DNA of 64,000 nt, from assembly GCF_964204865.1 (NCBI RefSeq), contig NC_135263.1:13702001-13766000 (forward strand). Reading direction: 5' to 3'. The DNA comes from Styela clava (lineage: Eukaryota). The notes beneath the pieces are model-generated. The model ran no database searches and was not told the DNA's origin. It worked only from the letters and a program-made list of their open reading frames with translations. Positions 2,311 through 45,600 of this stretch are shown here, in pieces (the first letter of the stretch is position 1; each line of letters opens with the position of its first letter). The position numbers were made by a program, and so were the translations under genes.

Positions 2311-3430
2311 ACGGTCATAGGCATTTGTATTGTATATCCGTTTTAAGCGTAGTTGGATACCAACATACATGCATTAGTTTAGCGCTTCTATAAACGTAAA
2401 CAACCTGTATTTCATATAAATAGGGCTTTTCATGTACATATATAAGGATTTCATTACGTTAATTTTCTATAGATTTTTGCATTTCTAACTGCATATGTTA
2501 GCTTCAGCAAATATATTCAAAAGTTCAATCAAATAAATACCTTTTTTATGTGATTGATGATGTTTATTTTCAGAAGATACGTTCCTATTTTTATTATGCA
2601 TGTGAAAGTTGTTAAAATATACATATTGCAATGCATATCATTCACTTAATATATCAAGCAGAAAATCAAGAATTAATGGAAATTCCAAAGATATGCATGT
2701 CTCTGAAACGAGCATACAAGAATTCATTTGAAAACAAATAAAATTAACAATGAAGTTAAAAGAGTCCCGGTATACAACAATATCATTTTGTGTTCAAACT
2801 AATTAAAGTAGTGTAATATTTTTGTTGTTTTTGTGGCCTACCTATGTGACGTAATCGTTGACGTATTTGTGAATAATCGTTTACGTAATTGTGACGTAAT
2901 CATTGAATCTTGCTTATTAGCCACGGTAATAAAGAAGGGATTCGAAGCTCGTAAAAACATCCATACTATCCTTTTTCATTATTTGTTATCAACCATAAAT
3001 GTACCATCTAATAAAAATGAGACGTTCGGAGTCATCGAGAATGTTTAAGGTTGCTCGTTTTTGATTAGTCCATAGTGACATCATAAACCAGAATCCAAAA
3101 TTAACTCCAACTCTGATTAAAACCGTTGAAACCAAAATCAATTATTCATAGGTTACAAATAATAATTTTGTAAAATAATAATTTCACAAGTTTTCAGAAA
3201 TATGTTTTATACCGGTCCATATCAAATCAAAATTTCATTCTCCGAATATCATCAACATAGAAACAAATTTAATTCTAACGATTTCAAAATAAATATAAGT
3301 GGATGTACGTACGTTTCAATCGGTACGACGTACATTATTACCTGAATTATTAATAAGAGTTCAGACTTATGACATGTAACGATATTATGTTTATTTTGAA
3401 TATGTATTTGCTGTTAGATTAAGGTATATA

Positions 3431-5717: not shown

Positions 5718-6108
5718 TTAAAGCAATCTTTAAAATCTATAAATGAAAAAATCGACGCAAAAAGCTAAAATAATAAAGCAAAAACATATGATTAAAGTAG
5801 GCATAGAAAAAATGTTGTTGACTGTTTTTGCAATTTCGCAGTTACAATTAGGAATCTGTATAATTTCAATCGAAAAATCTCCACTGTCACAAGGGTTGTC
5901 ATTTCGCGATAATGTGCAAACTCAAAACAGAACATTGACATTAGTAATTTCTCTGACAACTCCATAGGCTACCCAAACATAAAAATCAGCATCGCATTTA
6001 GAGACATCTCGGCGAATGCAAAGGAAATACCGGTTTTGTACATTTGAACGAGCCTCCCGAACAGAATATTGAATCCCAGTGGATTCGAACACTTTCTAGT
6101 CGTAGAAT
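5718..6108 (-). pseudogene. CCCH-RNB family copy B: 3' remnant of the TM-tailed gene
   Basis: Matches 40395-40796 (ILRLESVRIHWDS...FSMPTLIICFCFIILAFC) with an 11-bp deletion near 6028 and a premature TAA at 5730-5732; joined to unrelated DNA above 6108. Confidence 0.85.
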
Positions 6109-18364: not shown

Positions 18365-21300
18365 TCAATCCTCCACAGACCTGGAACCCTCATTGGCAAT
18401 TAAAAGAACAAGCTTGTGTACAGGCCGGTCTAAATAAGCTGTGGCCCCAACCCGCTTACCATTGGTTGTTAACAAACTTGTGGCAAGCTGAAGTCTTACT
18501 TTACGCACTAGCCCATCACCACTGGGGAAAACCTCAACAACCCTTCCTAATTTCCATGAATTTCTAGGAGACCCATCCTCAATAACATGGACAATATCAC
18601 CCAGAGCAAGATTTCTCTTTGGAAAGACCCATTTCCGTCTTTCTTGCAAAAGGTGAAGGCATTCTCGTCGGTACCTGTACCAAAATTCATTAACAAGATA
18701 TTGTACACGTCTCCATCGTTTTAAAAGATACTGATCAGACTTTTGGAAATTACCTGGAGGTGGCAACAAAACCTTGGGCTTGAGTGTTAAAATGTGGTTA
18801 GGAGTCAGTGGCTCAGGTGCCAGAGGATCACTCAAATTAGCAACCGCCAATGGTTTCGAATTAACAACCTGCTCAGCCTCCACTAACACAGTGCGAAATG
18901 ATTCTTCGCATAATATGTGACCAAACTGTAAAAACAGGGGCTCCAAGGCAGAACGAACAGTTCGTATCTGCCTTTCAACAAAACCCTGCATATGACTCGA
19001 ATTTGGCACCCCAAATTTGAAATCCACCCAGTCACATTCACCCTGTAAGAGAAAGATTTTGATCTTGACTTGATCAAATTCCTTATAAGCCTTTCTTAAT
19101 TCGTTACTTGCACCAATGAAATTGCTACCACAATCCCAGCGTAGCTGTTTCACAGGGCCTCTTCGAGCAGTGAACCTACGCAAAGCATTGATAAAAGAGT
19201 CTGTGCTCATAGAATTCAGAGATTCTAGATGTACAGCTCGTGATGACAAGCAAATGAATAAAATTACCCATCGTTTCAACATGGACCTTTTTTCTTTAAT
19301 AAAAAAATGCCCAAAGATATCCATGCCACAATATGTGAACGAACTGTCAAAATCAAACCTATCTTTTGGCAGGTCAGCCATCTTCTGGCCATGTGGGTTA
19401 CCTCTAATTTTTTTACAAGGAACACAAGCATGTATTTGCTGAGAAACAGCAGAAGTGCCTCCCAAAATCCAATAACCAGATTGCCGTATAGCATTTAGGG
19501 TCATATAACGACCCATGTGGCCACCACGGACATGAAAATGGTGAATAATAATACTTGTGACATGACCTTTTCTAGGCAAGACAACAGGGTGTTTTACCTT
19601 AAACTCCTCTTGAGAGTTTCGAATTCGTCCCCCAACTCTGACAATGCCAGAGTTATCAAGGAAGGGGTCTAATCTTGAAAACCGGTTTTTAAATGAGACT
19701 TGATCTGAGCAAGCAGAATTCTTTAGTACACTTAGATCTTCACTAAAATATGAACGCTGAAGGGAAAATATAATTAAATTTTCCGCCTGGCACAAGTCAT
19801 CAGAAGTAACTTTCTGAAAGGCAGATTTAGGATTCTTGAGAAAATCCTTGTACCTAATACAGTTTGCAACTGCACGTTTTGCTTTAAACCAAGATGAGAA
19901 AACATTAAGTCTAGAGATATCAAAATCTTTGCCTGAACAGTCAGCTTTGAAGGCGATGGTTCGATGCACAGAGCATCCCTTCATCTCCTTCTGCACTTCT
20001 AACATTACTTCATCATTCTGTTCAGGCTTTACTAATGGAGGAACAAATTTTCCTTCACACCACAAAAACTCTGGCCCGTTCAACCACCTACAACCAGCAT
20101 TTAGCTGGTCTGCTTGCAAGCCTCGACTCGCATCATCACTCGGGTTTGCCTTGGTAGGTACATGATGCCAGGATGATGGACTAGAAAAATTATGGATAGT
20201 TTGCACCCTATTAGCCACAAAAACATTGAAACGTTTGCTCTCATTTTGTATATACCCCGAAACCACCATACTATCGACCCAGAAAAACTCTGTGGCATTT
20301 TTCAATTTTAGTTCAGTTTTAACCAAACTACTCATTCTGGCAGACACCACTGCTGCAGTCAATTCCAACCTGGGAATTGTAACATGTTTCAACGGAGCAA
20401 CTCTGGCCTTACCAATTACAAAGGCACAATGTGCTTTGCCACAATCATTAACCAGACGTAAGTATGTACACTGGCCATAACCACTTTCAGAGGCATCGGA
20501 AAAGTGATGCAGTTCCACATGCTTGACATTACCAAAATTTACCGGCTTATAGCAACGATCTACTCTCAAATTCACCAAATGACAAAGATCCTTTTGCCAT
20601 TTTTCCCATTTAACCCTGAAAATCTCAGGAATGGGTTCGTCCCAGTCATAACAATCCTTGCACAAGGCTTGGAGGATTTTCTTACCCTCGAGAATGACTG
20701 GTGCTACCAGACCTATGGGATCATACACACTACTGACTGTGGAAAGAATTCCCCTTCTTGTAACAGGAGTAACCTTCGAGTCAATACGAAAACACAAGCA
20801 ATCACTCTCCACTAACCAGTCCACACCCAGAGCTCTTTCAACAGGTAAGGGATCAGATTTTGGATCCAAACACTGTACACTAGGAGACACAGACAATTGA
20901 GGAACGCTTTCAAGAACCTCCCGACTATTAGACATTATCTTACAGAGATTTAAACCAGCATTCGAACACAAATTTGTGCTATTTTTTATCAACTCAATAG
21001 CATCCTCTGCATTTGGCTTTGAAGTCAGACCATCATCAACGTAAAATTCATTACGAATGAAATCTGCTGCTTCCTTACCAAAGGAAGACTCACCATCATC
21101 TGCAGCATGCTTTAACCCGAAACTTGCACAGCCAGGTGATGAAATTGCACCAAATAGGTGAATTTTCAACTTGTAATGGCATAAGTTACCAGTCATATCA
21201 CTATTATCCCACCATAAACGTAACAGATCACGGTGCGGTTCATCAACTAAAAATTGATGAAAAAATGCTTTAATATCACACTTCACAGCCACTCTCTCCA

Positions 21301-24300
21301 TACGAAATCTGAGCAAAATACCCAAAAGACTGTTCATCTGGTCAGGCCCAGGAAGCAAATAATCATTCAAACACACACCACCATATTTTGCAGAACAGTC
21401 AAACACAACACGAATTTTATCAGGTTTCTTTGGATGATACACACCCAAATGAGGAACATAATTCACTCTACCATTGCTCAAACTTACTTCATCATCAGGC
21501 ACCCGTTCAGCATAATTCTCAATGATGTCCGACATAAATTTATAATAATCATTTTTGTACTTCTGATCTCGAAGCATACGCTTCTTCAGCTGCCCATGTC
21601 TTTTTTGAGCAAGAGGCAAATTATTCGGAAGGTTGATTTGTTGGGATCGTAAAGGTAACGGAAGTTTGTAATGGCCATCCTTTTTAGTGATGCCATCTGA
21701 GAGAATTTTTAGAAACCTGTGGTCTTCTGCTGACATATTTTGTTGATTGCCACAGTGCTCAACAAAATCAGCATTAAACATCGAACACACCTGATTGGGA
21801 AGTAATACTTCTTTTACTTTAGTGGAGAAGACAAACTTCTCCACGGGATCGACTTTGGAAGTAGCACCACATGCTAGCATCCTATGACTTACATAGCAAT
21901 CATTATCACCATGGCAAACTTTTCCAATAACACCCCATCCAAGTATGGATCTTTGAGCATATGGCTCAGTTTCTAGACCGGCTATTATATCTCGAGGTCT
22001 GATAGCATTTGGTGCATTGCTGCCTATAAGCATAGAAACAGGGAGATCTGGCATATATGGCATTAAGTGCTTGGCTACATCAGCTAAATGTTTCCACTTT
22101 TTGCAGACTTCAGATTTGGGAATTTGAGATCTCTTGACAGGGATCTCATCTCGGGTATATGCTCTGGGAACAGATGTAATATCTTTATGATCATAACTAG
22201 AGACTTGAATATTTTTAAAAACCTTGCAACGAATTAAGTCATTGCAGCTGGACATAGTGGATAATGATATCTGGGTGTCAACACCCTGTAACCCCAGTTG
22301 CTGTAGCAACTCACCTGTGATAAAACTTGTTTTAGACTGGCCATCAAGAAGACAGTAACATAACACTTCTTTTGAAGTGTTACCTTTGACCCATACTGGA
22401 ATAATCATGGATTGGTCCACACCATCATGTTGGTCAACTATTGAGCATACTTCAGAACAGAAAGATTGGTTACTTTCAGTCTGTTCTGGCTTATTGTCAA
22501 CATGAAAACATGTCAAATGGCCCTTATTGCACTTTCTGCAAGAAGCCACGTTTTTGCAGGACTTTGCACTATGACCCTTGGACATTTTCACTTCACAAGA
22601 ATAACATAAAAAATTATCCCAGAACAGTTTCCTTCTTTTTACCAAAGTAATTCGTAAGAATGTTTGACAATCACCAATTTTGTGAGGCCCATTACCATGC
22701 AAGCAACTATCTCGTGAAACATTAGTGCTAAAGGAATTTTTATTCATTCGATGACCATATCTCGAATGATTAGACTTACTATTTTGCTCAGTATTATACT
22801 TGGACGGGTTGAAATTCTCATCAAAAACTGTCATCTTAGGACAATGCATCACTGAGGCACGATTTAAAATAAATTTTGCAAACTCCTCGAATGGAGGATA
22901 TTTGGGGCAGTTTACCTTCAAGTTATCAGAGGTGTTTACATTAAACTTACACTTCCATTCATAAACTGACTCTTTCCACCTGTTAAACAATGAAGAGGGC
23001 AAAACTCTTTTGATTAACGCACATAGCTCTGAGGGAAAATCGAGAATTTTTAAATCCTCTACAACCTTTTTAACCTCAACAATTTGCTGAAGGAAATCAG
23101 AAAATGCCAACATGCCTTTTATATCATTTGGGCCAATTTTAGGCCATGATGCCAGTTTTGTTCTAAAGGCTATACTAATGACACTGTCATCACCATAGCG
23201 ATCTTTTAAGGCCTTTTTAGCTCTTTCATAAGAATTCTCGGATTGTAATAAAAACAAACCTTCAACCATACTTTTGGGTTCACCTGTCAAGTGACGTTCA
23301 AGCAGATTCATTTTATCTGCGTCATCAAGCAACCTTTGCTCAACTAGCTTTTTAAATGAACTCTCCCATTGTGGATATTGCAATGGATCCCCATCAAACA
23401 CCCTAACTTTGGCTACAGGAGCTCTTTGGACTGATAAAATGTTACTCATTAAATTGGTCATATCATGGGAAAGATTGCAGGTCTGTGGAGGAAGAGCAGC
23501 ACTATTCACAGTGGGAACAGAGATATTATTATCATTACAATGAGTTGGTAAGCTGCCTGAATTGGCAGACACAGTGGTAGTTTGTGTACAACAGTTAAAG
23601 GGAGCACTAGCAAAACTAGATACATTTGAAACATTTTGTGATACATTAGAAACAGTAGGCACTGATGGACATGAATTTACATTAGGGGGTGGCAAAGAAA
23701 AGCTACCAACATTTACAACACCAGTGGAAATGGCATCTTGGGAAGCACTAACATTAGCAATGGATGGTCGGGGATTGATTACAGGACTATAGCTCGATGC
23801 TTGGCAGGGAATATCAACAACAGTGGATAAAACTTGATCATGATTAGAAATATCTGAATTATTTAGCTCCATTTGAGGATTAATAACCATGCACGCTGGG
23901 GCCTTATTTAAAATAGGAGATGATTTTGAATTTGCATTAAAACAATTATTATTAGGATTGAAATAATTATTTGCACCTCTGATTAGATCCACATCAACAC
24001 TGAAAGGATTTTCGGCCTCTTCAGCTTGAAGACAAACTAGCGCCCTGGCTTTTTTCTCCGCTATCTCTTTTTGAATCTGAAGTTCCTTTTCTTGCTCTAT
24101 TAGAAGAGACTGTTGTTTCTGAAGTTCCTTTTCTTGCTCCATTAGACGAGACTGTTGTTTTCGAATTTCTGTTGTGGCTTCCATCGCGGCAACTTCCTTT
24201 TGCAATTCGAAAAATTCCTCTTTTGCTGAGACTTTGCTTTGATGAGACAATGAAGATTTCACACTGGTTACAGATCGAGCAGAGCTGTGTCGCTTTGAAC

Positions 24301-24705
24301 TTGGATGATGCGATCGAGAACATTGGGATTTTTCTTCTAACTCTAATATTTTCGGGCTAGCAGTTTCAGAAACTTTTACGATATTGTTAATACATTGTTC
24401 ATAACGACAAATGAAATTATTCAATTCAGTTTCCTATAAAATGTTCTTCATATTTTTGACAATGGAGGATAAACTTGATTTGTACTGCACTAGTTTTAGA
24501 AACACCTCTTGGATACCAGAACTTTCCACTTCATGGAAGGCTGATTTCAATGAGTTACTATTTTCTTCACTGCTAGTGGTGACAGAAGTCATTTCAGCAG
24601 CAGAGAATATTTTGATTGGTTTGCTTTTTGAAGTTTCACATAGGGATGAGATTTCCAAACCATCTTTTGAATTAGCAATATGATTTCTTCAGATTTTGTT
24701 GACAT
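18365..24705 (-). CDS. BEL/Pao gag-pol polyprotein; 2019-codon open frame 18365-24424, N-terminus disrupted by TAG (24434-24436) and a probable frameshift near 24690
   Basis: Gag with three Cys/His knuckles, protease LLDGQS, RT YVDD, RNase H HFSDAS, integrase HH-CC and D-D-E (MDIFG / WDCGSNF / VERQIR), C-terminal WKLGRVVEVFPSGDGLVRKV typical of BEL/Pao. Confidence 0.9.
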
Positions 24706-31991: not shown

Positions 31992-34326
31992 AGTGTATCA
32001 CCTATTTTTGGGATAGATTTTAGTTTTGTTCAGTCAACTTGGGCATTAACGAACTGCAAAATTGTAAAAAAATAATCATTTATATGCAACACCATGCATT
32101 TGCTTCAATATGTTATTTTGTTGATGTATATATTTCCTTTGTTTGTTTATATAATAAAAACAGGAGGAAGTTCTTAAAATGAACAACCGATAAATTCTAT
32201 CATAACAAATCCTTTCGATAAATAACTTGAGCATGTAAATAAATATGCAAGCTGTTTTCAATATATATATATGCATATTCTGTATTTTCATGAAAGTAGA
32301 TTTGGGAACTTACAGAGATAGACCTCGCCAATATTACCGTGTCAGCATCACACAACAAATTACAATAAATAAAATGCCCGTGGGGAATTCTAAAAAATGA
32401 AAAATACAGTCACAGTTGAAAAGCTTTTACCTAATGTATCAAAATATTGAATCAATTTAACAACTTTAAAGTTTTATTATACTTAGAGAGCGCAAAACGA
32501 TATCATATACATATCGTAAAATATATCAATTTATTTCAGTGGTTTTGTATTGTCATTTTCACCTCTTAAGCTTTGATTTCCAAAATTAAAAAAATTAACA
32601 TGCTCATTATTTTCAGTTGTGGGGAATTGTCTTAATGAGTACATAAGGATAGTTACTGAATATATTAATGCTTTTAACCACTTTTTATTAATAGTTAATG
32701 TTATTTTTTTGAAATAAGGATGTTGCCTCAATTGATCGTCAGACACGTAGCAAAATATTCTGGTATTGCGGTATTGTATTTTACATATACATTTAATTCG
32801 AAAAATAAAAAATACACTGCCGCCGCTGCACAAGAACCTGCTATTTATATGTGAAGACAGCGATCTTTCGGGTTCGGCATAGACTTGAGATTGTGGCCGT
32901 GTCAATTCTTACTCAAAACTTTTACCTGAGATGCCAATACAACAAGTCCAAAACTATTACCGACAAACTTGTCTCACTCGGTAAAGTCGTAGACCGCTTG
33001 GCAATTTGTCAATATTTAATATTTCAAAATGTTAGAAATATATTTGAATATGCAATTAATGAAGTTTAGAATACCCACCACCTGTTGTTGTCGCAATAGT
33101 TAAATAAATACATACTTACTGTGCCTTCAAAACATTCTTACATATTTACCTTCGAAATCAGCATGAGAACAATGAACACATAGTTTATGTATAATTTATT
33201 TTTTCCAAGTTATCGACATTATCTAATCTCGACCAAGTAAGGCTCATCATTAATTTGAGATTTAAATAACTGTATTTCGACATATCATGATAAATAATTA
33301 ACAGAATAAATGTTGATTTTCGTCAGAACTACAACTTTATTAAACGCAACACATCGAATATAAAATTAGTTTCTGATTGAAACAAAGAAAGACGCATAAT
33401 GGGTTTGAGAAAAGGGTAGAATTATGATAGACAATAGCACTCGGCTACATAATTTTTATAACCATAAAATAGGCCCAGTGAAAACTAATATCCATGCGAG
33501 AAGTGTTCGAACTCGTTAAATTCTAAACAAAGCTTTAGTTAGACAGGTAGTCATATGCACGTGAGTATAACTCTGCCAATAAGTTTCCCCATTTGGAATG
33601 CGGCAAATGTTCGAATTTAAAACCGCAAACCCGTGAAACAAACACAACTATAATTTCAGGCCCTGGCAATCGGGACATCTGATACATTATGTTGCTTGTA
33701 TAAAAAAAACTTATTTAAAAAAACTCATTGTTAACTAATAGAGTTTAGATAGTAATGAAGTTTCCAAATTTGAGATATATATCGGCTTTGAGTTTATTTT
33801 TATAATTGTAATGACGTTATGAATTAGTTATAATTTGGTTCAAACAACCGAAAACTGATTTTTTGTTTGCCAACAAAGCTGGCCAGTTCTGTTTGTTTAT
33901 ACTCATAACTCATATGTTTTTTTTATAAATGCTCCAAATCATGATATTTGTTTTCAAGCATACAGAGTTTACGCCATATCCAAGCAGACTAGAAAAAAAA
34001 ACGTCCGAAAAAAAAATCACAAATGGTGACTATAACCATGAATGCTGCAAAATAAATGTAGATATATTGTATTTACTCTAATCTTTTTCTGCTAGAAAAT
34101 CTATTTTAAATTGAATGACATTCATTGCTAATCCTGCTGAAAAGCAAACTTTGTTTCTGCATGGATACTAAGTCTGTCACATGGGCGAGTCAATTTGTCT
34201 GGTATTCGTTAGAATATTTTATGTTTTATGTGAAATAAAAAAAATTTAGTATTAGTATAATAATCGTCTGTAATTTATACACGCCAAGCGTATTTAGCTG
34301 CTCTGATCGACTCTAGTGATGCAAAG

Positions 34327-34552
34327 ATGGGGAAATGTCAAAATTATATGACTTTCGAATCATGCAAATTTGGGTATGGGTGTACACACAGTCATCCAGC
34401 AAAAAAAAAACATTCCGATTCAGAATTATTTGTTGCTACTGTAGTCGAACTTTTAAAGGATAATAACTTAACAGTTGTAATTAAAAGAATTGATGCAAAA
34501 ATTCCCGAAACTTATTCTGTTCTAAATAATACTTGGTGTCTAGCCATTGGTG
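34327..34552 (+). pseudogene. CCCH-RNB family copy E: 5' fragment (intact CCCH finger plus start of OB fold); ORF reads on to 34584
   Basis: MGKCQNYMTFESCKFGYGCTHSHP...IKRIDAKIPETY...W is homologous to the N-terminus of D; homology stops at ~34552. Confidence 0.8.
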
Positions 34553-37537: not shown

Positions 37538-40500
37538 CGGTCATAGGCTTTTGTATTGTATATCAGTTTTAAGCGTTGATGGATACCAACATACATGCAT
37601 TAGTTTAGCGCTTCTAAAAACGTAAACAACATGTATTTCATATAAATAGGGCTTTTCATGTACATATATATGGATTTCATCACGATAATTTTCTATAGAT
37701 TTTTGCATTTCTAACTGCATATTTCAGCTTTAGCAAATATATTCAAATGTTCATTCAAATAAATAAATACCCTCTTTTATGTGATTGATAATGTTTATTT
37801 TCAGAAGATACGTTCCCATTTTTAATATACATGTGAAAGTTGTCAGAATGTACAATTTGCAATGCATATCATTCACTTAATATATCAAACAGCAAATCAA
37901 GAACTAATGAAAGTTCCAAAGATATGCATGTCTCTGAAACGAGCATACAAGCATTCATTTGAAAACAAATAAATTAACAATGAAGTTAAGGAGTCCCGGT
38001 ATACAACAATATCATTTTGTGTTCAAACTAATTAAAATAGTGTAATATTTTTGTTGTTTTTGTGGCCTACCTATGTGACGTAATCGTTGAGGTATTTGTA
38101 AATAATCGTTTACGTAATTGTGACGTAATCATTGAATCTTGCTTATTAGACACGGAAATAAAGAAGGGATTCGAAGCTCGTAGAAACATCCATACTATCC
38201 TTTTCCACTATTTAGTATCAACCATAAATGTACCATCTAATAAAAATGAGAAGTTCGGAGTCATCAAGAATGTTAAAAGTTGCTTGTTTTTGATTAGTCC
38301 ATGGTGACATCATAGACCAGAATCCAAATTAACTCCAACTCTGATTAGAACCGTTGAAACCAAAATCGATTATTCATAATAACTTCGTTAAAAAATAATT
38401 TTACAAGTTTTTTGAAATATGTTTTATACCAGTCCATATCAAATCAAAATTTCATTCTCCGAATATCATCAACATAGAAACAAATTTAATTCTAACGATT
38501 TCAAAATAAATATAAGTAGATGTACGTACGTTTCAATCGGTACGACGTACATTATTACCTGAATTATTAATTGGAGTTTAGACTTATGACATGTAACGAT
38601 ATTATGTTTATTTTGAATATGTATTTGCTGTTAGATTAGGGTATATACAGGTTGGGCCAAAAAATGTTGTTCAGAATGTAAAAACGGTAATATTTTTTGG
38701 CCCATCCTGTATATATATGTATATACTGCTCTATATCTTTTTAATAACAGTTTTTCGAATTGAGAATTTGATTATATGTTTTGTATATCGTTCAAATACT
38801 AAAATGAAACCAATGAAGCTATGATTATTCATCACTGTAGGGGGCGATCTTCGTACAGAGAATTTTGGGTTCAGAAACAGTTCTATCAGGTAATCCTGGG
38901 TTATCTTGTACAAATCAGAGCAAGAAAATTAACAAATAATATTGTAGACTCAGACTATTTCTATAACATAAGGCTGAGGTTCGAATCAAAGATTATGTAC
39001 ATAAAATGAGATGCTGATCTTGTAAAGCTCGATTAGGTGTCAAAATTTTGCAATGATCAGGCTTAAACACAAGTACGATGAAGCAGTATCTGGACCCAGG
39101 AATCGATTCATCGATGCAAAATTGATGCACTCATGCGCCTCATAGCCAAGTACTGCGTGTTTTTTTGTTTTTATTTGTTTTTTTTTAGAGAACGTAAAAT
39201 CAATCAGGACGATTTTTGAAAATAATGAATAGTGAAAGTATGACATGTCATTTTAATGTTAAATAAACTCACTGAAACACAATATACAGGCAACTCCAAT
39301 TAATTACAATACAATATAATGACAATAGAGAACTAATCGAGACTTTTCATACGCTTTTTATATGACATTGGCTTGAATAAACATTATAAAATTGCCTCAT
39401 CATAAGAAATTAATCCGCTCCTGTCAATTTCGCCCGTTCATCCGAATAAGGAATTTATGATTTAGTTAATTTATTGTATTTATGTCGAGATTATTTTTGA
39501 AACCTTATATATTGTTTTATACGATATAAATAATCATTCATAATCTTTCTTACAACATTTTTTGAATTCGATCTTGATTTTTTTGAAATAGTCTTTTATA
39601 TTTTCGTCAACCAAGTATTTGTGAATTTTTGAAAACAGTAGAAAGAGGAAAATTTTGATTTTATTAATACCAAAGTGTAGTCATTACCCGAATTATTGTG
39701 AAATATACTCTTTGTTTAGCAGGCTATATAGCAAATTTTAAGATTTAAGAATTGACGAAATTAGGTGTATGCCCAAGGATTGGGCTGGTTTCAGTGAATG
39801 AAAAATCTCAGTCCGTTTGATATTTTAAAAACATTTCCTTCATGGACTAGTTAAAGCTCATCAATGTTATTTAAATGAAAAACATATATATCTTTTAGGT
39901 TTCATTAGCAAAAATTAATTAGAATTTTGAAACTTTCATACTCTGGAACTTCATTAAAAGAGTCATTGCATTACAGAAAATTTACTTTGTGTCTATGGAA
40001 AGATTTGATGCATTAATTAAGCCATATTCTTAATAGTTTTTATTAGTTTTGACAAACGAACTATCATATTACAAGATATCACTATATATATATATATATA
40101 TATTACGACTCCAAATATCAGGGGTGCCAAACCTGCTTTCGACCGCGATCGACTAAAATCTTCAAAATAGCTCGCGATTGACTGATCGGCCCAGTCTCAA
40201 ATACTGTATGTGTGTATTGTATTTTGCGCATTTATTAGTACTTTATTTTTGCTTCTTTAAAATACTGGTTAGGGGCAATTTTTGGGATATTTTATTAAAT
40301 TCACTCAACTTTAGACGCGATAGACTGCTCGAGACATGGCGATTGACCGTCGATCGCGATTGACGTGTTGGCGACCCCTGGAATAGACGTTTGGTTAAAG
40401 CAATCTTAAAAATCTATAAATGAAAAAATCAATACAAAAAGCTAAAATAATGAAGCAAAAACATATAATTAAAGTAGGCATAGAAAAAATGTTGGTGACT

Positions 40501-40796
40501 GTTTTTGCAATTTCGCAGTTACAATTAGGAATCTGTATAACTTCAATCGAAAAATATCCACTGTCATGATGGTTGTCATTTTGCGATAAAGTGCAAACTG
40601 AAAACAGAACATTGGCATTAGTAATTTCTCTGACAACTCCATGGGCTACCCAAACATAACAATCAGCATCGCCTTTAGAGATATCTTGGCGAATGCAAAG
40701 GAAATCTCCTACATGGACCGGTTTTGTACATTTGAACGAGCCTCCCGAACAGAACATTGAATCCCAGTGGACTCGAACACTTTCTAGTCGTAGAAT
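36180..40796. repeat. Segmental duplication block 1, copy b
   Basis: Colinear with 1100-6108. Confidence 0.9.
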
Positions 40797-42650
40797 CAAA
40801 GGTTTTCGTCCCTCTGTAATGGCTCTCTGCAAGAATTCAATGTTTTCCATGATACCCAGAGTATTTATGTCTGTTCTATCTGACATGAATGCCAATTCGG
40901 GATTTTTTACGTGGGTCAAACACAAATGACAATTTGTTCCGATACTGAGTAATCTTAAGCTGAGGTCGTCGTTCTTTCCAACGTCCTTTTCTGACACTTG
41001 AAGTTTCAGTCTGAAATTAGATGCTACGGTAAACAATGTATCAGAACCGTTATTATTGTAAGGATATAGAATTGATTCTGGTTGAAAATTTTGACCTTTA
41101 AAAAATTGTTTTATTATCTCCGAAAAATTCTCATTTTCCCAATCCTCTAATATTTCGTCAATGTTGTCACGATTCAAATTCACGTATTTCTGATTGAAGT
41201 AATTATCAGGATCACAGTTAACATTCTTAAGAAGTACAATGGTCTTTCCATTTTCATTTTCGACCTCCATGTTGTAGTGGAGTTCGCCATAACAAATTTT
41301 TTTAGTTGGTCTCCAGTTCATCAAATTATGTTTTATCTTATTGTAAATATATGAGACTGAAAAATTAGTTGCACCAACATTTGTTATCACAGCGTCAGCC
41401 AAGTGTGGAGTTTTGTAACGATCACAAATCAGACCAAGCAAATCATTTCGTGAGTACAGAAGTGATCTCTGCGAAAGAAATGAATTTATTAGTATTTTCT
41501 GGTTGATTTTGCTTGAAATTTTCCTCAAAGGTGAGGTGAAATCCACGATATCATCTTCGAGCAAGACCGATGCCAACTTCACGTCCCGATGATATTTAAC
41601 GGCCATTCTAGTTGACTGCGGTGGCTCTACTGAGAGAAATAAATCTGAAGTAGCCAAGAAAGGCGCAAGTTCTTCAATGCAAATTTTTTTCTCCAAAATA
41701 ACGCTTTGTGTGTCATTGTATATATCTTGTGGAACAATAAGACTGTTATCACAATTTTCCCATTTTTCTGTTGCAATAGATGTACGTTTTGTGATTACGT
41801 TGCCACCAACATATTGTTTTGCGCATTGGTTGTAACGATGCATGAGTTTACCTACAAGTATGTTTACTTTCCAATCTTCAATATCTCTCAACCTAGAAGC
41901 AATAAAATGCCGATCTTGATAAAGAGATTTAGTATCTATGAAATATCTCCACAGAATTTGAAACTTCTTTCTTGGACATTCCATGAATGAATATTCTTCC
42001 GAAATTCGTACTAAGGTGAAGGTTGGTGCGCTTGCATTCACAGTACAATTGGTATGAAAATAAATAGACAGAGCCAACGAGTTATTTTTCTTTGAAAAAC
42101 CATTTGAGTATTCATTTATATGCAGAGGATTTAAGTTTGTGGATTCAGCAATGATATGTATTCCTATTTTATTACAATCAGATTTTCTGCATTTTTGACA
42201 TTGTTCAATACTGAAAGCGTCATCGTGACGTTTGCATCCTTCAGTATCTAACGTAAACGCCTGCACCTTCATTTTTCCTCCGATAATTTTATCACCGATA
42301 GCTTTTAACAATATTGAAACTATTCGACCAATATTAAGTTGACTTCCTTGTTGTGGTTTCCTCCAATTGTCTTCTTCGTCGTGAATTTTTATAACTTCAT
42401 CTGATTTTTGAAATATCACAAGATCCCCGTTTTCAGCATTTTTTCGATGCCAGTAATTTTTAGGCAGGAAATAAGTGTCTGACTTTTCATCTTCAACTCT
42501 TTTAATATAAATTCGGGGTTTTGCATCACTAACTTGCTCTACGACCGCGGCAAAATATTCTGTGTTTATATTTTCTGATAAATGAACTTTTCTACATTCA
42601 GATCCATACATGCATGCTCTAAAAGTGATATAATCTCGGCATGTATTCAT
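40395..42650 (-). CDS. CCCH zinc finger - OB - RNB (RNase II family, HELZ2-related, helicase-less) protein with C-terminal transmembrane tail, 751 aa; copy G, the only intact family member
   Basis: ATG at 42650; C-x8-C-x5-C-x3-H (CRDYITFRACMYGSECRKVH); RKNAENGDLVIFQ...IGRIVSILLK (CSD/OB-like); AFTLDTEGCKRHDDAFSIE...IGIHIIAE; FTSPLRK..SKINQKIL; DFLCIRQD...YVWVAHG...FSIEVI; hydrophobic tail IFSMPTLIICFCFIILAFCIDFFIY-RFLRLL. Confidence 0.85.
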   Translation of the reverse strand: MNTCRDYITFRACMYGSECRKVHLSENINTEYFAAVVEQVSDAKPRIYIKRVEDEKSDTYFLPKNYWHRKNAENGDLVIFQKSDEVIKIHDEEDNWRKPQQGSQLNIGRIVSILLKAIGDKIIGGKMKVQAFTLDTEGCKRHDDAFSIEQCQKCRKSDCNKIGIHIIAESTNLNPLHINEYSNGFSKKNNSLALSIYFHTNCTVNASAPTFTLVRISEEYSFMECPRKKFQILWRYFIDTKSLYQDRHFIASRLRDIEDWKVNILVGKLMHRYNQCAKQYVGGNVITKRTSIATEKWENCDNSLIVPQDIYNDTQSVILEKKICIEELAPFLATSDLFLSVEPPQSTRMAVKYHRDVKLASVLLEDDIVDFTSPLRKISSKINQKILINSFLSQRSLLYSRNDLLGLICDRYKTPHLADAVITNVGATNFSVSYIYNKIKHNLMNWRPTKKICYGELHYNMEVENENGKTIVLLKNVNCDPDNYFNQKYVNLNRDNIDEILEDWENENFSEIIKQFFKGQNFQPESILYPYNNNGSDTLFTVASNFRLKLQVSEKDVGKNDDLSLRLLSIGTNCHLCLTHVKNPELAFMSDRTDINTLGIMENIEFLQRAITEGRKPLILRLESVRVHWDSMFCSGGSFKCTKPVHVGDFLCIRQDISKGDADCYVWVAHGVVREITNANVLFSVCTLSQNDNHHDSGYFSIEVIQIPNCNCEIAKTVTNIFSMPTLIICFCFIILAFCIDFFIYRFLRLL

Positions 42651-45600
42651 TATCACATTGCAGTAGAGATATTGAGGAAATCAGGGCGATCAAATGTCCT
42701 AGATTAAGAATCTGTATTTGTGAAAATTGACTGATTAGTTTTTAACATATAATACAATGAAATAAAATATTAAAACAAAGCGTATAACATATGCCTAACG
42801 AATGATGTTGCAAACGCATTGTTTTAATTTCTGTAAGTTTCGTATATAAGTCAGAGCTGTAGCGATAAATTGAGAACAATAATTACTCTGGAATGTGCCC
42901 ATTAAATCGTGAAAAAAAAATAGTGAAAATAAATAATTCTCGTTTGTGATAACTTTGAAAATCACGGATCCTTAACATTTCCGATTATTGTCGATTGTTT
43001 GATCCTATATTTTCGACAAACATGACGATAAGATTAAAAAATATGAAATCATAATATTACTTATCAATGATCTCAGTCTCAAGCTTCATACCTCAACTAG
43101 TTGACTGGCCAAAACAAACTGTAATGTTTATATTTAAAGCTCGACTGCAGTAGCTCCCAACATGTTTCTACACTGGTGGCGATATTGTTTAATTGAATTA
43201 ACTAATGTACGATATCATTATAGTAACAGAACTTTAGCCAATCGCTCGCCCTGTGAACCTCCTAAATCTTTTACCAATAATACGTTCAGAATGACTACGC
43301 GCTCTACAACGACAGTAAAATGTTCTTATGAGTAGGCGTAATCAAGCGTACTCAGTCAGACCTAGCCAGGCGTAGCCAAATTTCAAAAACATTTTAGCGC
43401 CATTCTTTGAGATATTGTTTGATATCAATGGCTAATTTTATTTGGCTTTGTTTGAAGCGAAAGGCACGAGTGAGCGTCCAATTACGTCATTATACAAAAT
43501 ATATTCAACGAGAAGTAACTGAGGTGGGTTCGCCCTACTTGACGAACAAATATTTCAATGAATAAACAAGTACAATTTTATGTGAAAATTACCTGAAAAA
43601 TTATTACCACAGTAAGACAAAACAAAATAATGAAATTAATCCAAAAATCCAGTACAATTACAAGTATCTTCAACACAAAAGGACGGTTCCTAAATTGAAA
43701 AATTCTGAAAAACTACTTTCCCCTATTATTCGTAACAGTAATACAATGAGATTTATCCCTAAAATGTTCAGGGCTGAATCAATTCGGGTCGTCAATAGCT
43801 TTTAATCTAATATATCGCAACGTCCACAGCTGACTATTCAAGTGAGATGCGAAAAGGTTGTTCGAGCTATATACTGTCAACTTGCTCACCATCAAATAAC
43901 CTAGCTCATCAAATATAAAAACTTACTAAACCTTTTGCTTCATGAATGTGCAAATAGTATAAAGTGCTACGAAAATTTCAACGAGATGGGTTCACCGTTG
44001 TGAGTGGCATAACATCTGTTATATTTGTACAGAAAATTAAATTGCACTTGTAAAATATGACATCTGCTCATATAATTTATTATACAGGACAAGCAACAAT
44101 AACATAAAAAAAAAGGAAATTTTAAAATGAGGGAGTCCATTTTAATTAAAACATAATAAAAAGTTTGGGAGCATGCATATCATTGTAATCATTTGATGGA
44201 ACTTTGTCAGCAATACATATTTGAATAAAAATCGGTTGGTGTTTTATGTCGAGTATGAAACAGGCCCATTAGAATACTATTTGTAGAGCTATTTTGATAA
44301 AAAATTAGGAATTGTTTTAGAAATAGTATATGATTTATTTTAGAAACGACATTTAGTTAGACGTTGCACGACACTAACAACATATATCTCTACCAACAAA
44401 ATAAAATTATAACATTGTAGCTAATGTAGAAATTACACGTTCGCGTTTATTGTCGCTAAATTTTGCAATGACTGAGGTTTTTACCATTTTATTTAAGAAT
44501 TAATAGAATTTATTAATCTCAGCATTACTTAAAATACGTAGTTCTAAGTTTAAAAAAAAATAAATGTTTCTGAAATCAATGCAAATTTTCATATTCAGCT
44601 CAATCAAATTTGTTCGAATCCTAAAACTGCTATTGAATAAATATAAAGCAGTATACATATATATTTATATATGCCTCAAGCCTCCCAATATTTCTCAATC
44701 ACTATAACATCGACCAACTCAAAACTATTAAAATCAGAAATACACCATGTGTTTTTCCTTAATTAAAATTGGAACAAATCTTTCTTTGTCCCAATCATCC
44801 TCTAAATTCTATTTGATTTGTTGTGCTTGAAGACTTCGTATGTTTGAAAGCAATACTATTCGTTTTGTTAAATATTAATCAAATAGTACATGCTATGTCG
44901 AAATAATATTGCTATCGAATTGTGTTAAATCATAAACCAATTAGGGAACTTGGTTGATCGAGCTTAAAATGTACTTGATAAATTTGAAAATGAACATAAC
45001 CATTGTGTTGTATTGATTGTTATCTGGCAACCTTGTTTGATGTTGTTTTCGAGTAACTAAGATACATAGCCAAAATGTATTTATTTAATAACTCCAATAG
45101 CTACTCGCGGGTGACTTTTTAATGTATTTTCAATTTTCGTGACATTTCGAAATATCAAACATTAACACTTTCCGTGTTTGGATAATTGACGTCAGCTCTT
45201 ATATTTAATTTGATTACTTTCCTGACAGTTGTATCCGAAACTACAGTATCGGCTACTACAAAAATCTATTTTTGCGATAAACAGTTGTTGAAATAATTTC
45301 CATGTAAAATATATGATAAATTTTACCTAGATGTTGGTATCATGTACGCAAAAATTCGTTAGTTCGAAGCCACGATTGTTTCATTCACTCATTTTGTAAC
45401 TAGCGCCTCCGATTCCGAACGGCTCTGCCTAACTTGAAGTTACGTTATTTTTAGAAATAGAGAGTAAAGGCCCATGTCTTAATTAGGTCATCAAAACGAC
45501 AAACTTGCCTTTCCCATTCTAATAGATTTTGTATTAATGCCTTAACATTGGAGAAAATCTTGCATTAACCTTTTGTGATCTTCAGATAAGGAAGTTCGGA

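What the first reader, a model, noticed from the sequence alone, without database searches (positions are those of the whole stretch)
40395..40500. The only intact family member has a C-terminal membrane anchor
Copy G ends ...NIFSMPTLIICFCFIILAFCIDFFIY-RFLRLL*: ~25 hydrophobic residues plus a short basic tail and no N-terminal signal peptide, the pattern of a tail-anchored protein. Copies A, C, D and F stop shortly after IPQC/IPKC with polar tails, so the family has soluble and anchored types, and remnant B shows the tail predates the duplication. Inference: an RNB-type nuclease held on the cytosolic face of ER, mitochondria or peroxisome. This would parallel membrane-targeted antiviral isoforms (prenylated OAS1 p46, ZAP-L) that reach viral replication membranes.
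Basis: partly seen in the sequence, partly recalled or inferred. Interest (0 to 1): 0.8.

Follow-up and report, generated by a model that had tools for sequence, protein, structure and literature searches.

The report
Young UTR-derived hydrophobic tail on HELZ2-like protein
One young branch of a sea-squirt (Styela clava) family of helicase-less HELZ2-like RNase II-type proteins ends in a membrane-anchor-like hydrophobic tail, but that tail was recently recruited from 3'UTR DNA, occurs in no other relative, and has no demonstrated function.

Summary
The tail is real. Copy G (window 40398-42650, minus strand, 751 aa from its ATG) ends in TLIICFCFIILAFCIDFFIY plus RFLRLL. This is the only transmembrane-grade segment in the protein, and the N-terminus is a CCCH finger, not a signal peptide. 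Contigs from runs guessed to be RNA cross CDS, tail and stop without a splice.

The context changes the reading:
- **Organism and family size.** The genome is Styela clava. The family has at least 60 loci and at least 13 intact ORFs, so G is "the only intact member" only within this window.
- **Tail distribution.** All other intact copies, and eight more distant relatives from other assemblies, end in short polar tails. The tail DNA exists at five loci: G, a 99% identical intact twin, a pseudogene and two remnants (one is B).
- **Origin.** The tail aligns with the 3'UTR of short-tailed paralogues. It therefore arose when deletion(s) removed the ancestral end and stop codon.
- **Selection.** The evidence is mixed. 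The tail changes as fast as most flanking non-coding DNA, the G branch has dN/dS near 0.9, but 6 of 10 tail changes are synonymous.

The "RNB-type" call is supported: hhalign to an ascidian HELZ2-like protein gives 99.1% probability, and Foldseek matches DIS3L2, Rrp44 and RNase II.

Verdict: a plausible but unproven tail anchor, most likely a young near-neutral extension.

The parts
40398..42650 (-). Copy G coding sequence, 751 aa from the conserved ATG (42650-42648). Stop TAA at 40395-40397. Single uninterrupted ORF.
   Evidence: identical to G000:C18:13742398-13744656
40398..40520 (-). Lineage-specific C-terminal extension: the 41 codons after the IPNC Cys codon, NCEIAKTVTNIFSMPTLIICFCFIILAFCIDFFIYRFLRLL. 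It replaces the ancestral 'HQPE...' polar end.
   Evidence: this DNA is found at only 5 genomic loci
40416..40475 (-). Predicted transmembrane helix, residues 726-745 (TLIICFCFIILAFCIDFFIY).
   Evidence: KD19 2.83 and Hessa sum -2.6; AF2 models residues 724-750 as an isolated helix after a low-confidence linker 711-725
40398..40415 (-). Short basic C-terminal end RFLRLL, net charge +2.
   Evidence: read directly from the sequence
40119..40380 (.). 262-bp MITE-like element starting 15 nt after G's stop. It is shared by G, L002, L003 and B, and contains AATAAA hexamers (minus strand; TTTATT at 40231-40236 on the plus strand).
   Evidence: inverted repeats 40119-40132 / 40367-40380 and 40139-40153 / 40349-40363; shared insertion; very high contig depth in the runs, and the X1 contig ends at 40209
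5721..6108 (-). Remnant B: a 3' fragment of a G-lineage copy carrying the same tail, an internal TGA, and a TAA three codons before G's stop.
32051..32140 (+). 3'UTR segment of short-tailed copy D, 102-191 nt after its IPKC Cys codon. It aligns colinearly with G's tail-coding DNA.
   Evidence: score 29.6 against a maximum of 25.3 for 400 random window pieces; z = 5.1
2391..2487 (+). 3'UTR segment of short-tailed copy A that aligns with G's tail-coding DNA.
   Evidence: z = 4.2

Best explanation
Copy G belongs to a Styela clava-expanded family of helicase-less, HELZ2-derived proteins built as CCCH finger, OB/CSD-like folds, a divergent RNB core and a C-terminal beta-barrel.

In one recent sublineage, deletion(s) at the 3' end removed the ancestral polar C-terminus ('HQPE...') and its stop codon. 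The reading frame now runs for 41 codons after the IPNC cysteine, through T-rich DNA that is 3'UTR in the paralogues. Because T-rich codons encode F, I, L and C, the extension is a very hydrophobic helix followed by RFLRLL. That is the sequence signature of a tail-anchor.

The extension is transcribed. If the protein is made, the tail should be captured by the cytosolic tail-anchor triage machinery (SGTA/BAG6/GET-TRC40). The outcome would be insertion into the ER membrane, which the high hydrophobicity and low tail charge favour, or degradation.

I judge it most likely a young, nearly neutral variant rather than an established, selected membrane-targeted isoform.

Shown: the tail, its restriction to one sublineage, its UTR homology, its presence in the contigs and the RNB kinship. 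Inferred: translation, membrane insertion or degradation, and neutrality.
For: Distribution:
- The tail DNA occurs at only five loci.
- Every other paralogue ends in a short polar tail. So do distant relatives P0002-P0006, P0009, P0011 and P0014.
- The tail clade is a terminal branch nested beside L004 and L006.

Origin:
- Homology between G and its nearest short-tailed relative L004 stops at the IPNC codons.
- The tail DNA aligns colinearly with the 3'UTRs of copy D (z 5.1, above all 400 random controls) and copy A (z 4.2).
- The tail is 55% T.

Lack of clear constraint:
- Substitution density is 0.081 per site in the tail, against 0.083 in the adjacent CDS and 0.090 in the farther flank.
- The G+L002 branch has 5 synonymous and 14 non-synonymous changes.
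- L003 has two stops, and B and B2 are truncated.

Expression:
- A 599-nt contig of run X1 runs colinearly over 40209-40807. It crosses CDS, tail and stop and continues into the MITE. No joints were found in four runs.

Published background:
- Noncoding-derived C-terminal tails are typically hydrophobic and are triaged by BAG6 towards degradation or membrane targeting (bioRxiv 10.1101/2022.07.20.500724).
- T-rich DNA tends to encode transmembrane segments (PMC7005711).
- Young yeast de novo proteins reach the ER through C-terminal TMDs (PMC11384008).
- A hydrophobic TMD with low tail charge favours the ER (PMC5450235).
Against: - The tail's hydrophobicity (KD19 2.83) is reached by only 0.2% of random read-throughs in this window. 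None of 57 alternative or read-through frames of paralogue flanks comes close; the maximum is 1.94.
- Six of the 10 substitution events in the tail across the five copies are synonymous. The expected share is about 0.23-0.26, giving a binomial p of about 0.02 by my arithmetic. The TMD residues are invariant except for one I-to-V change. This could reflect purifying selection on the anchor.
- Two intact ORFs of about 750 aa carry the tail.
- The exact deletion events cannot be reconstructed. The proximal 3+2-nt indel model and a roughly 100-nt deletion model both have partial support.
- The runs are only guessed to be RNA.
Confidence: 0.62

Rival explanations
1. Adaptive membrane-anchored isoform. 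The new tail is a functional tail-anchor that tethers this HELZ2-like RNB protein to the cytosolic face of the ER or another organelle, for example to reach RNA on viral or retroelement replication membranes. It is kept by selection in G and L002.
For: - The geometry is ideal for a tail-anchor, with extreme hydrophobicity.
- Synonymous changes are in excess and the TMD is nearly invariant across five copies.
- Two intact copies exist, and the tail lies in the contigs.
- The parent family is related to HELZ2, an interferon-induced cytoplasmic exoribonuclease (PMC10516660).
- The family is large, tandemly amplified and evolves at dN/dS 0.3-0.6, as immune gene families often do.
Against: - The tail is found in only one young sublineage.
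- Three of its five copies are dead.
- The G+L002 branch has dN/dS near 0.9.
- The tail evolves at the rate of most neutral flanking DNA.
- G and L002 are 99% identical, so they count as one observation.
- No localisation, protein or activity data exist.
Confidence: 0.22
2. The hydrophobic tail is ancestral to the family and was lost in the 'soluble' copies.
Against: - B and B2 are G-lineage fragments that share the same MITE and flanks.
- All deep clades on contigs C18, C5 and C2, and all outgroup relatives, share the short 'C[HL]Q...' or otherwise polar ending.
- The tree needs a single terminal gain.
- The tail DNA is homologous to paralogue UTRs.
Confidence: 0.02
3. The tail is not part of the protein. 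It would be an assembly or annotation artefact, or the mRNA would be spliced or polyadenylated upstream so that the tail is never translated.
For: - Contigs cannot define RNA ends, and the runs are only guessed to be RNA.
- Expression appears low and fragmentary.
Against: - The same sequence is present at five loci.
- It also occurs in independent runs from three studies.
- One contig spans CDS, tail and stop and continues 186 nt beyond, with no joints.
- No AATAAA lies upstream of the stop within the tail. The first hexamers lie inside the MITE.
Confidence: 0.06

Closest known systems
HELZ2 (interferon-induced 3'-5' exoribonuclease of the RNB family)
   Same: - Profile-profile homology to Clavelina HELZ2-like: 99.1% probability, E 7e-19, over query positions 123-694 against residues 284-1014. 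This covers the RNB domain and the region after it.
- CCCH finger(s) lie at the N-terminus.
- The second of the four canonical RNB aspartates is replaced. It is Arg here, while PMC10516660 reports Asn in human HELZ2, which is still active.
   Different: - There are no UPF1-like helicase domains.
- The protein is about 710-750 aa rather than more than 1500 aa.
- It is intronless and amplified to at least 60 loci.
- The Pfam RNB model is not reached at its threshold.
- Copy G adds a hydrophobic C-terminal tail that HELZ2 lacks.
Tail-anchored (TA) membrane proteins (GET/TRC40 clients)
   Same: - A single very hydrophobic segment of about 20 aa ends 6 residues from the C-terminus.
- There is no signal peptide and no other TMD.
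- A TMD GRAVY near 2.8 with tail charge +2 lies in the range that favours the ER in mammalian and yeast data (PMC5450235).
   Different: - Membrane insertion is not demonstrated.
- The TMD contains an Asp.
- The segment is evolutionarily brand new and unconserved.
Hydrophobic C-terminal extensions from translated 3'UTR or noncoding DNA, and de novo TMDs from T-rich sequence
   Same: - The tail-coding DNA is 55% T and homologous to paralogue 3'UTRs.
- It matches the described rule that noncoding-derived C-termini are hydrophobic and are routed by BAG6 to degradation or membranes.
- It also matches the findings that T-rich DNA yields TMDs (PMC7005711) and that young proteins use C-terminal TMDs to reach the ER (PMC11384008).
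   Different: Here the extension is fixed in the genome by deletion of the stop region. It is not produced by translational read-through, and it sits on a large folded RNB-type protein rather than a microprotein.
Membrane-targeted antiviral isoforms OAS1 p46 and ZAP-L
   Same: The concept only: a C-terminal variant that could bring an RNA-directed effector to endomembranes.
   Different: By my recall, those isoforms use CaaX prenylation generated by alternative splicing, and their antiviral benefit has been shown. G ends ...RFLRLL, with no Cys at position -4, uses a putative TMD, and has no functional data.

Membership tests
Tail-anchored protein (topological class) | Single transmembrane segment within about 30-40 residues of the C-terminus | tested here: met
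   Residues 726-745 of 751; KD19 2.83 and Hessa sum -2.6; modelled as a helix over 724-750. DeepTMHMM and Phobius were not available.
Tail-anchored protein (topological class) | No N-terminal signal peptide and no other TMD | tested here: met
   The N-terminus is a CCCH finger. The best KD19 window outside the tail is 1.35.
Tail-anchored protein (topological class) | Post-translational membrane insertion with the N-terminus facing the cytosol | not testable with these tools
   Needs localisation and protease-protection experiments.
RNB (RNase II-like) exoribonuclease family | Match to the Pfam RNB model PF00773 above its gathering score | tested here: not met
   No hit for G at E <= 1. Five of 21 family members hit only below threshold; the best is E 9e-5 at 22 bits against a cut-off of 29.3.
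RNB (RNase II-like) exoribonuclease family | Homology to or fold of the CSD-RNB-S1 architecture | tested here: met
   hhalign to an RNB-containing HELZ2-like protein gives 99.1% probability. The top 42 Foldseek PDB hits are all RNB proteins (DIS3L2 at E 1.8e-13, Ssd1, Rrp44, RNase II, RNase R), but global TM-scores are only 0.2-0.25. All the nearest ESM Atlas clusters shown are RNB, at score 0.80, which is a lead only.
RNB (RNase II-like) exoribonuclease family | Four conserved active-site aspartates in motif I | tested here: not met
   The family motif is FTLDxEGxxRHDDAFSIE. D135, D143 and D144 are invariant, but the second position is an invariant Arg141. Human HELZ2 carries Asn there and is active (PMC10516660), so activity is neither shown nor excluded.
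HELZ2 | RNB domain flanked by two UPF1-like helicase cores | tested here: not met
   No AAA_11 or AAA_12 domains in G or any family member, whereas Clavelina HELZ2-like has them. The family is HELZ2-derived, not HELZ2.
CaaX-prenylated antiviral isoforms (OAS1 p46, ZAP-L type) | C-terminal CaaX box | tested here: not met
   G ends RFLRLL* with no Cys at position -4.

The most novel reading that the evidence does not exclude
A membrane anchor was born de novo from 3'UTR DNA on a member of a rapidly amplifying, HELZ2-derived RNB nuclease family in an ascidian. Selection keeps it, which creates an endomembrane-tethered RNA-degrading or RNA-binding effector. This would be an invertebrate-chordate counterpart of membrane-targeted antiviral isoforms, caught within a few percent of sequence divergence of its origin.
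Probability: 0.17. Interest if true: 0.65.

Novelty: new variant of a known kind. Interest (0 to 1): 0.36.

Why it matters
If the tail works as an anchor, this would be a datable case of a soluble RNA-processing or innate-immunity-type protein gaining a membrane address through capture of 3'UTR sequence. The ancestral UTR is still visible in paralogues, and dead and live copies sit side by side. That makes it a natural test of the idea that noncoding-derived hydrophobic tails lead to membrane localisation. If the tail does not work, it is an ordinary example of a stop-loss extension in a fast-turnover gene family, and it should not be annotated as a membrane protein class. In both cases, the 'soluble and anchored types' picture of the family needs correcting.

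Tried and rejected
- **Sequence searches against the PDB.** phmmer and a family-profile hmmsearch found only weak CCCH-finger matches and no RNB hit. Sequence alone did not support RNB until profile-profile and fold comparisons were run.
- **First AlphaFold run.** The 12-paralogue alignment gave pLDDT 35 and was unusable. Adding the distant relatives raised it to 68.5.
- **First origin model.** A 3-nt plus a 2-nt deletion just before the ancestral stop has some support against copies A and F. The colinear match to UTR segments about 100-200 nt downstream in copies D and A fits at least as well. I therefore claim only 'deletion(s) removing the stop region'.
- **Capture from another gene or repeat.** Rejected, because the tail DNA exists only at the five G-lineage loci and ends before the MITE.
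- **Ancestral tail.** Rejected by the tree and the outgroups.
- **Word-based protein search.** It found only one S. clava protein.
- Read laying was used once on 4501 letters. The window has no N.
Full report
**1. What is at the coordinates**

The minus strand of window 40395-42656 is one open frame. From the ATG that is conserved across the family (42650-42648) it encodes 751 aa and ends ...IEVIQIPNCNCEIAKTVTNIFSMPTLIICFCFIILAFCIDFFIYRFLRLL*.

The best 19-residue Kyte-Doolittle window is 2.83 (residues 726-744). A simple sum on the Hessa biological scale gives -2.6 kcal/mol. The next most hydrophobic window in the whole protein is 1.35. The N-terminus is a CCCH zinc finger, which gives weak Pfam and PDB matches, and is not a signal peptide. 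The stated pattern is therefore real: one C-terminal TMD, a short basic end and no signal peptide.

The tail is also more hydrophobic than chance read-through usually gives. Translating from 200,000 random positions of this window gave KD19 >= 1.6 in 3.6% of trials and >= 2.8 in 0.2%. None of 57 alternative or read-through frames of the paralogues' own 3' flanks exceeded 1.94.

**2. Organism and family**

The only database protein found by the word search is an 'uncharacterized protein LOC144422904 [Styela clava]'. The window is C18:13,702,001-13,766,000 of a 377-Mb assembly.

Searching that genome with G gives at least 60 matches. They lie in tandem clusters on C18 (13.65-13.86 Mb), C5 (12.88-13.27 Mb) and C2. 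At least 13 ORFs are intact and start at the same Met-x-x-Cys. 'The only intact family member' is therefore true only inside the window. Pairwise dN/dS among intact copies is 0.3-0.6, so the family as a whole is constrained but fast-evolving.

**3. Is it RNB-type?**

Direct sequence methods fail. There is no Pfam RNB hit for G and no RNB hit against PDB sequences, even with a family profile.

The exhaustive profile search found only 15 proteins. They include five full-length distant relatives, P0002-P0006 (from Logan assemblies, unnamed), and at E 8e-5 a Clavelina lepadiformis '3'-5' exoribonuclease HELZ2-like' protein.

Further evidence then supports the RNB call:
- With the distant relatives added (alignment A2), hhalign against the HELZ2-like protein gives 99.1% probability and E 7e-19. 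The match spans family positions 123-694 and HELZ2-like residues 284-1014, which covers its Pfam RNB domain (277-645) and the region behind it.
- Five of 21 members give sub-threshold Pfam RNB hits.
- All nearest ESM Atlas clusters shown are RNB proteins, at score 0.80, which is a lead only.
- An AlphaFold model built on A2 (pLDDT 68.5) hits only RNB proteins among its top 42 Foldseek PDB matches. These include DIS3L2 at E 1.8e-13, the pseudonuclease Ssd1, Rrp44, RNase II and RNase R. Global TM-scores are low, at 0.2-0.25.

'RNB-type' is therefore supported, and the family is a helicase-less derivative of HELZ2.

Whether it is an active nuclease is open. Motif I is FTLDxEGxxRHDDAFSIE, with the second canonical Asp replaced by an invariant Arg. 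Human HELZ2 has Asn at that position and is active (PMC10516660).

**4. Distribution of the tail**

Every other intact or near-intact paralogue ends 5-13 residues after IP[QKN]C with a polar tail, such as HQPENET, HQPEIERS, HQPKIGN or LQSDDEIEKSKST. The distant relatives P0002-P0006, P0009, P0011 and P0014 also end in short polar tails right after the conserved VVEVI strand.

The 106-nt tail DNA occurs at exactly five places in the genome:
- G.
- L002, at C18:13,840,775, which is 99% identical and intact.
- L003, at C18:13,808,349, which is 95% identical and has two stops.
- Two 3' remnants: B in this window, and B2 at C18:13,779,839.

All copies that reach that far share the 262-bp MITE-like insertion beginning 15 nt after the stop, and they share the flanks beyond it.

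In a maximum-likelihood tree rooted by the distant relatives, G+L002 is a terminal branch with 100/100 support. It is grouped with short-tailed L004 and L006. G-L004 dS is 0.30, while G-B non-coding divergence is about 6%. The tail was therefore gained once and recently. B shows only that the tail predates the G/B segmental duplication.

**5. Origin of the tail**

Homology between G and its nearest short-tailed relative stops at the IPNC codons. The tail-coding DNA is 55% T.

It aligns colinearly with the 3'UTRs of short-tailed paralogues. For copy D, G's AACTGCGAAATTGCAAAAA matches AACTGCAAAATTGTAAAAA lying 102 nt after D's Cys codon, and further blocks follow. The score is 29.6, against a maximum of 25.3 for 400 random window pieces, with z = 5.1 against dinucleotide shuffles. 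Copy A gives z = 4.2 and copy F gives z = 3.0.

A more proximal alignment to A and F, needing a 3-nt and a 2-nt deletion that destroy the ancestral TAA, also has some support. I cannot resolve the exact events. Both models agree that deletion(s) removed the ancestral polar end and stop, and that the frame now runs through former UTR.

**6. Is the tail in the mRNA?**

Thirteen runs hold the stretch or part of it. Nine look like transcriptome assemblies ('RNA?' is the tool's guess), and none is on record as RNA. I laid four of them, from three studies.

Contigs of those four runs laid on 39300-43800 cover the gene (40209-42503), the MITE (a high-copy repeat), and a few isolated short pieces in the outer flanks. 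They do not cover 42622-42772 just upstream of the ATG.

One 599-nt contig of X1 runs colinearly over 40209-40807, crossing CDS, tail and stop and continuing 186 nt into the MITE. No joints were reported in any run. That contig's three differences from the window are exactly L002's variants, and a 15-nt insertion in X2 is the L002/L003 state. The transcripts probably come from the twin copy L002, which encodes the same tail.

The contig ends 22 nt past an AATAAA inside the MITE. This fits a poly(A) site there, but contigs cannot prove ends.

**7. Is the tail under selection?**

The evidence is mixed.

Against constraint:
- Substitution density among G, L002, L003 and B is 0.081 per site in the tail. 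It is 0.083 in the adjoining CDS, 0.090 in the farther flank and 0.037 in the MITE.
- Since the split from L003, the G+L002 branch has 5 synonymous and 14 non-synonymous changes, roughly dN/dS 0.9.
- Three of the five tail-bearing loci are dead.

For constraint:
- Six of the 10 substitution events in the tail are synonymous, against an expected share of 0.23-0.26. My binomial arithmetic gives p of about 0.02.
- Within the TMD the only amino-acid change is I to V.
- Five of those events are T/C transitions in a T-rich sequence, where roughly 40% would be synonymous. The numbers are small, and some events lie on pseudogene branches. I treat this as a hint only.

**8. Mechanism**

Published work shows the following:
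- Polypeptides from noncoding sequence typically carry hydrophobic C-termini. The BAG6 triage complex captures them for proteasomal degradation or membrane targeting (bioRxiv 10.1101/2022.07.20.500724; see also PMC10364623, listed).
- T-rich DNA readily encodes TMDs (PMC7005711).
- Young yeast de novo proteins reach the ER through C-terminal TMDs and post-translational insertion (PMC11384008).
- For tail-anchored proteins, a very hydrophobic TMD with low tail charge favours the ER, whereas high tail charge favours peroxisomes or mitochondria (PMC5450235).

G's TMD (GRAVY about 2.8, tail charge +2) would by those rules be ER-biased. This part is inference.

The AF2 model places an isolated helix (724-750) after a low-confidence linker of about 15 residues behind the last beta-barrel. 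That geometry is compatible with a tether.

My best reading, at about 0.6, is a young, nearly neutral UTR-derived extension whose product is either membrane-inserted or destabilised. An ancestral tail gets about 0.02, and non-translation or artefact about 0.06.

**9. Limits**

- No dedicated TM predictor was available.
- The runs are not certified as RNA.
- The BEL/Pao element noted in passing was only described.

Noticed in passing
window 18365-24424 (-): An uninterrupted 2019-aa ORF of a BEL/Pao-type LTR retrotransposon. Its Pfam hits are Peptidase_A17 (E 6e-48), DUF1759, integrase H2C2 plus rve, and DUF5641. It sits inside the gene-family array. I only described it.
   Followed up: partly
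window 40119-40380: A 262-bp MITE-like element with terminal inverted repeats CAGGGGTGCCAAAC / GTTGGCGACCCCTG. Related sequence is very abundant in the transcriptome-like runs, with depth about 40-200. It appears to supply the AATAAA and 3' end for the G-type genes.
   Followed up: partly
window about 42263-42266 (G codon 128): G has a 15-nt in-frame deletion (loss of VVSSL) relative to L002 and L003. The X2 contig shows the undeleted state. G and its twin therefore differ in the linker just before RNB motif I.
   Followed up: no
G000:C18 13.70-13.77 Mb versus 13.77-13.86 Mb: The window's gene order looks repeated further along the contig. B pairs with B2, C with L024, D with L015/L016/L017, F with L021/L022/L012, and G with L003 and L002. 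This points to recent large segmental duplications of the whole array.
   Followed up: no
window 42219-42248 (-); family motif FTLDxEGxxRHDDAFSIE: In RNB motif I the second canonical Asp is an invariant Arg in all 12 S. clava sequences aligned. By my reading of the alignment the Clavelina HELZ2-like protein has Ile there. Human HELZ2 has Asn and is active (PMC10516660). Whether the family is catalytically active is unresolved.
   Followed up: partly
L007-L011, L023, L026 (contig C5), just upstream of the ATG: The translated sequence immediately upstream of the start codon is conserved (...GNVK|M) in the C5 copies. This could mark a conserved 5'UTR or a splice or trans-splice acceptor. I did not examine it.
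   Followed up: no
window 34327-34536 (+): An additional short N-terminal fragment of the family, 30% identical to G residues 3-69, lies just upstream of copy F.
   Followed up: no
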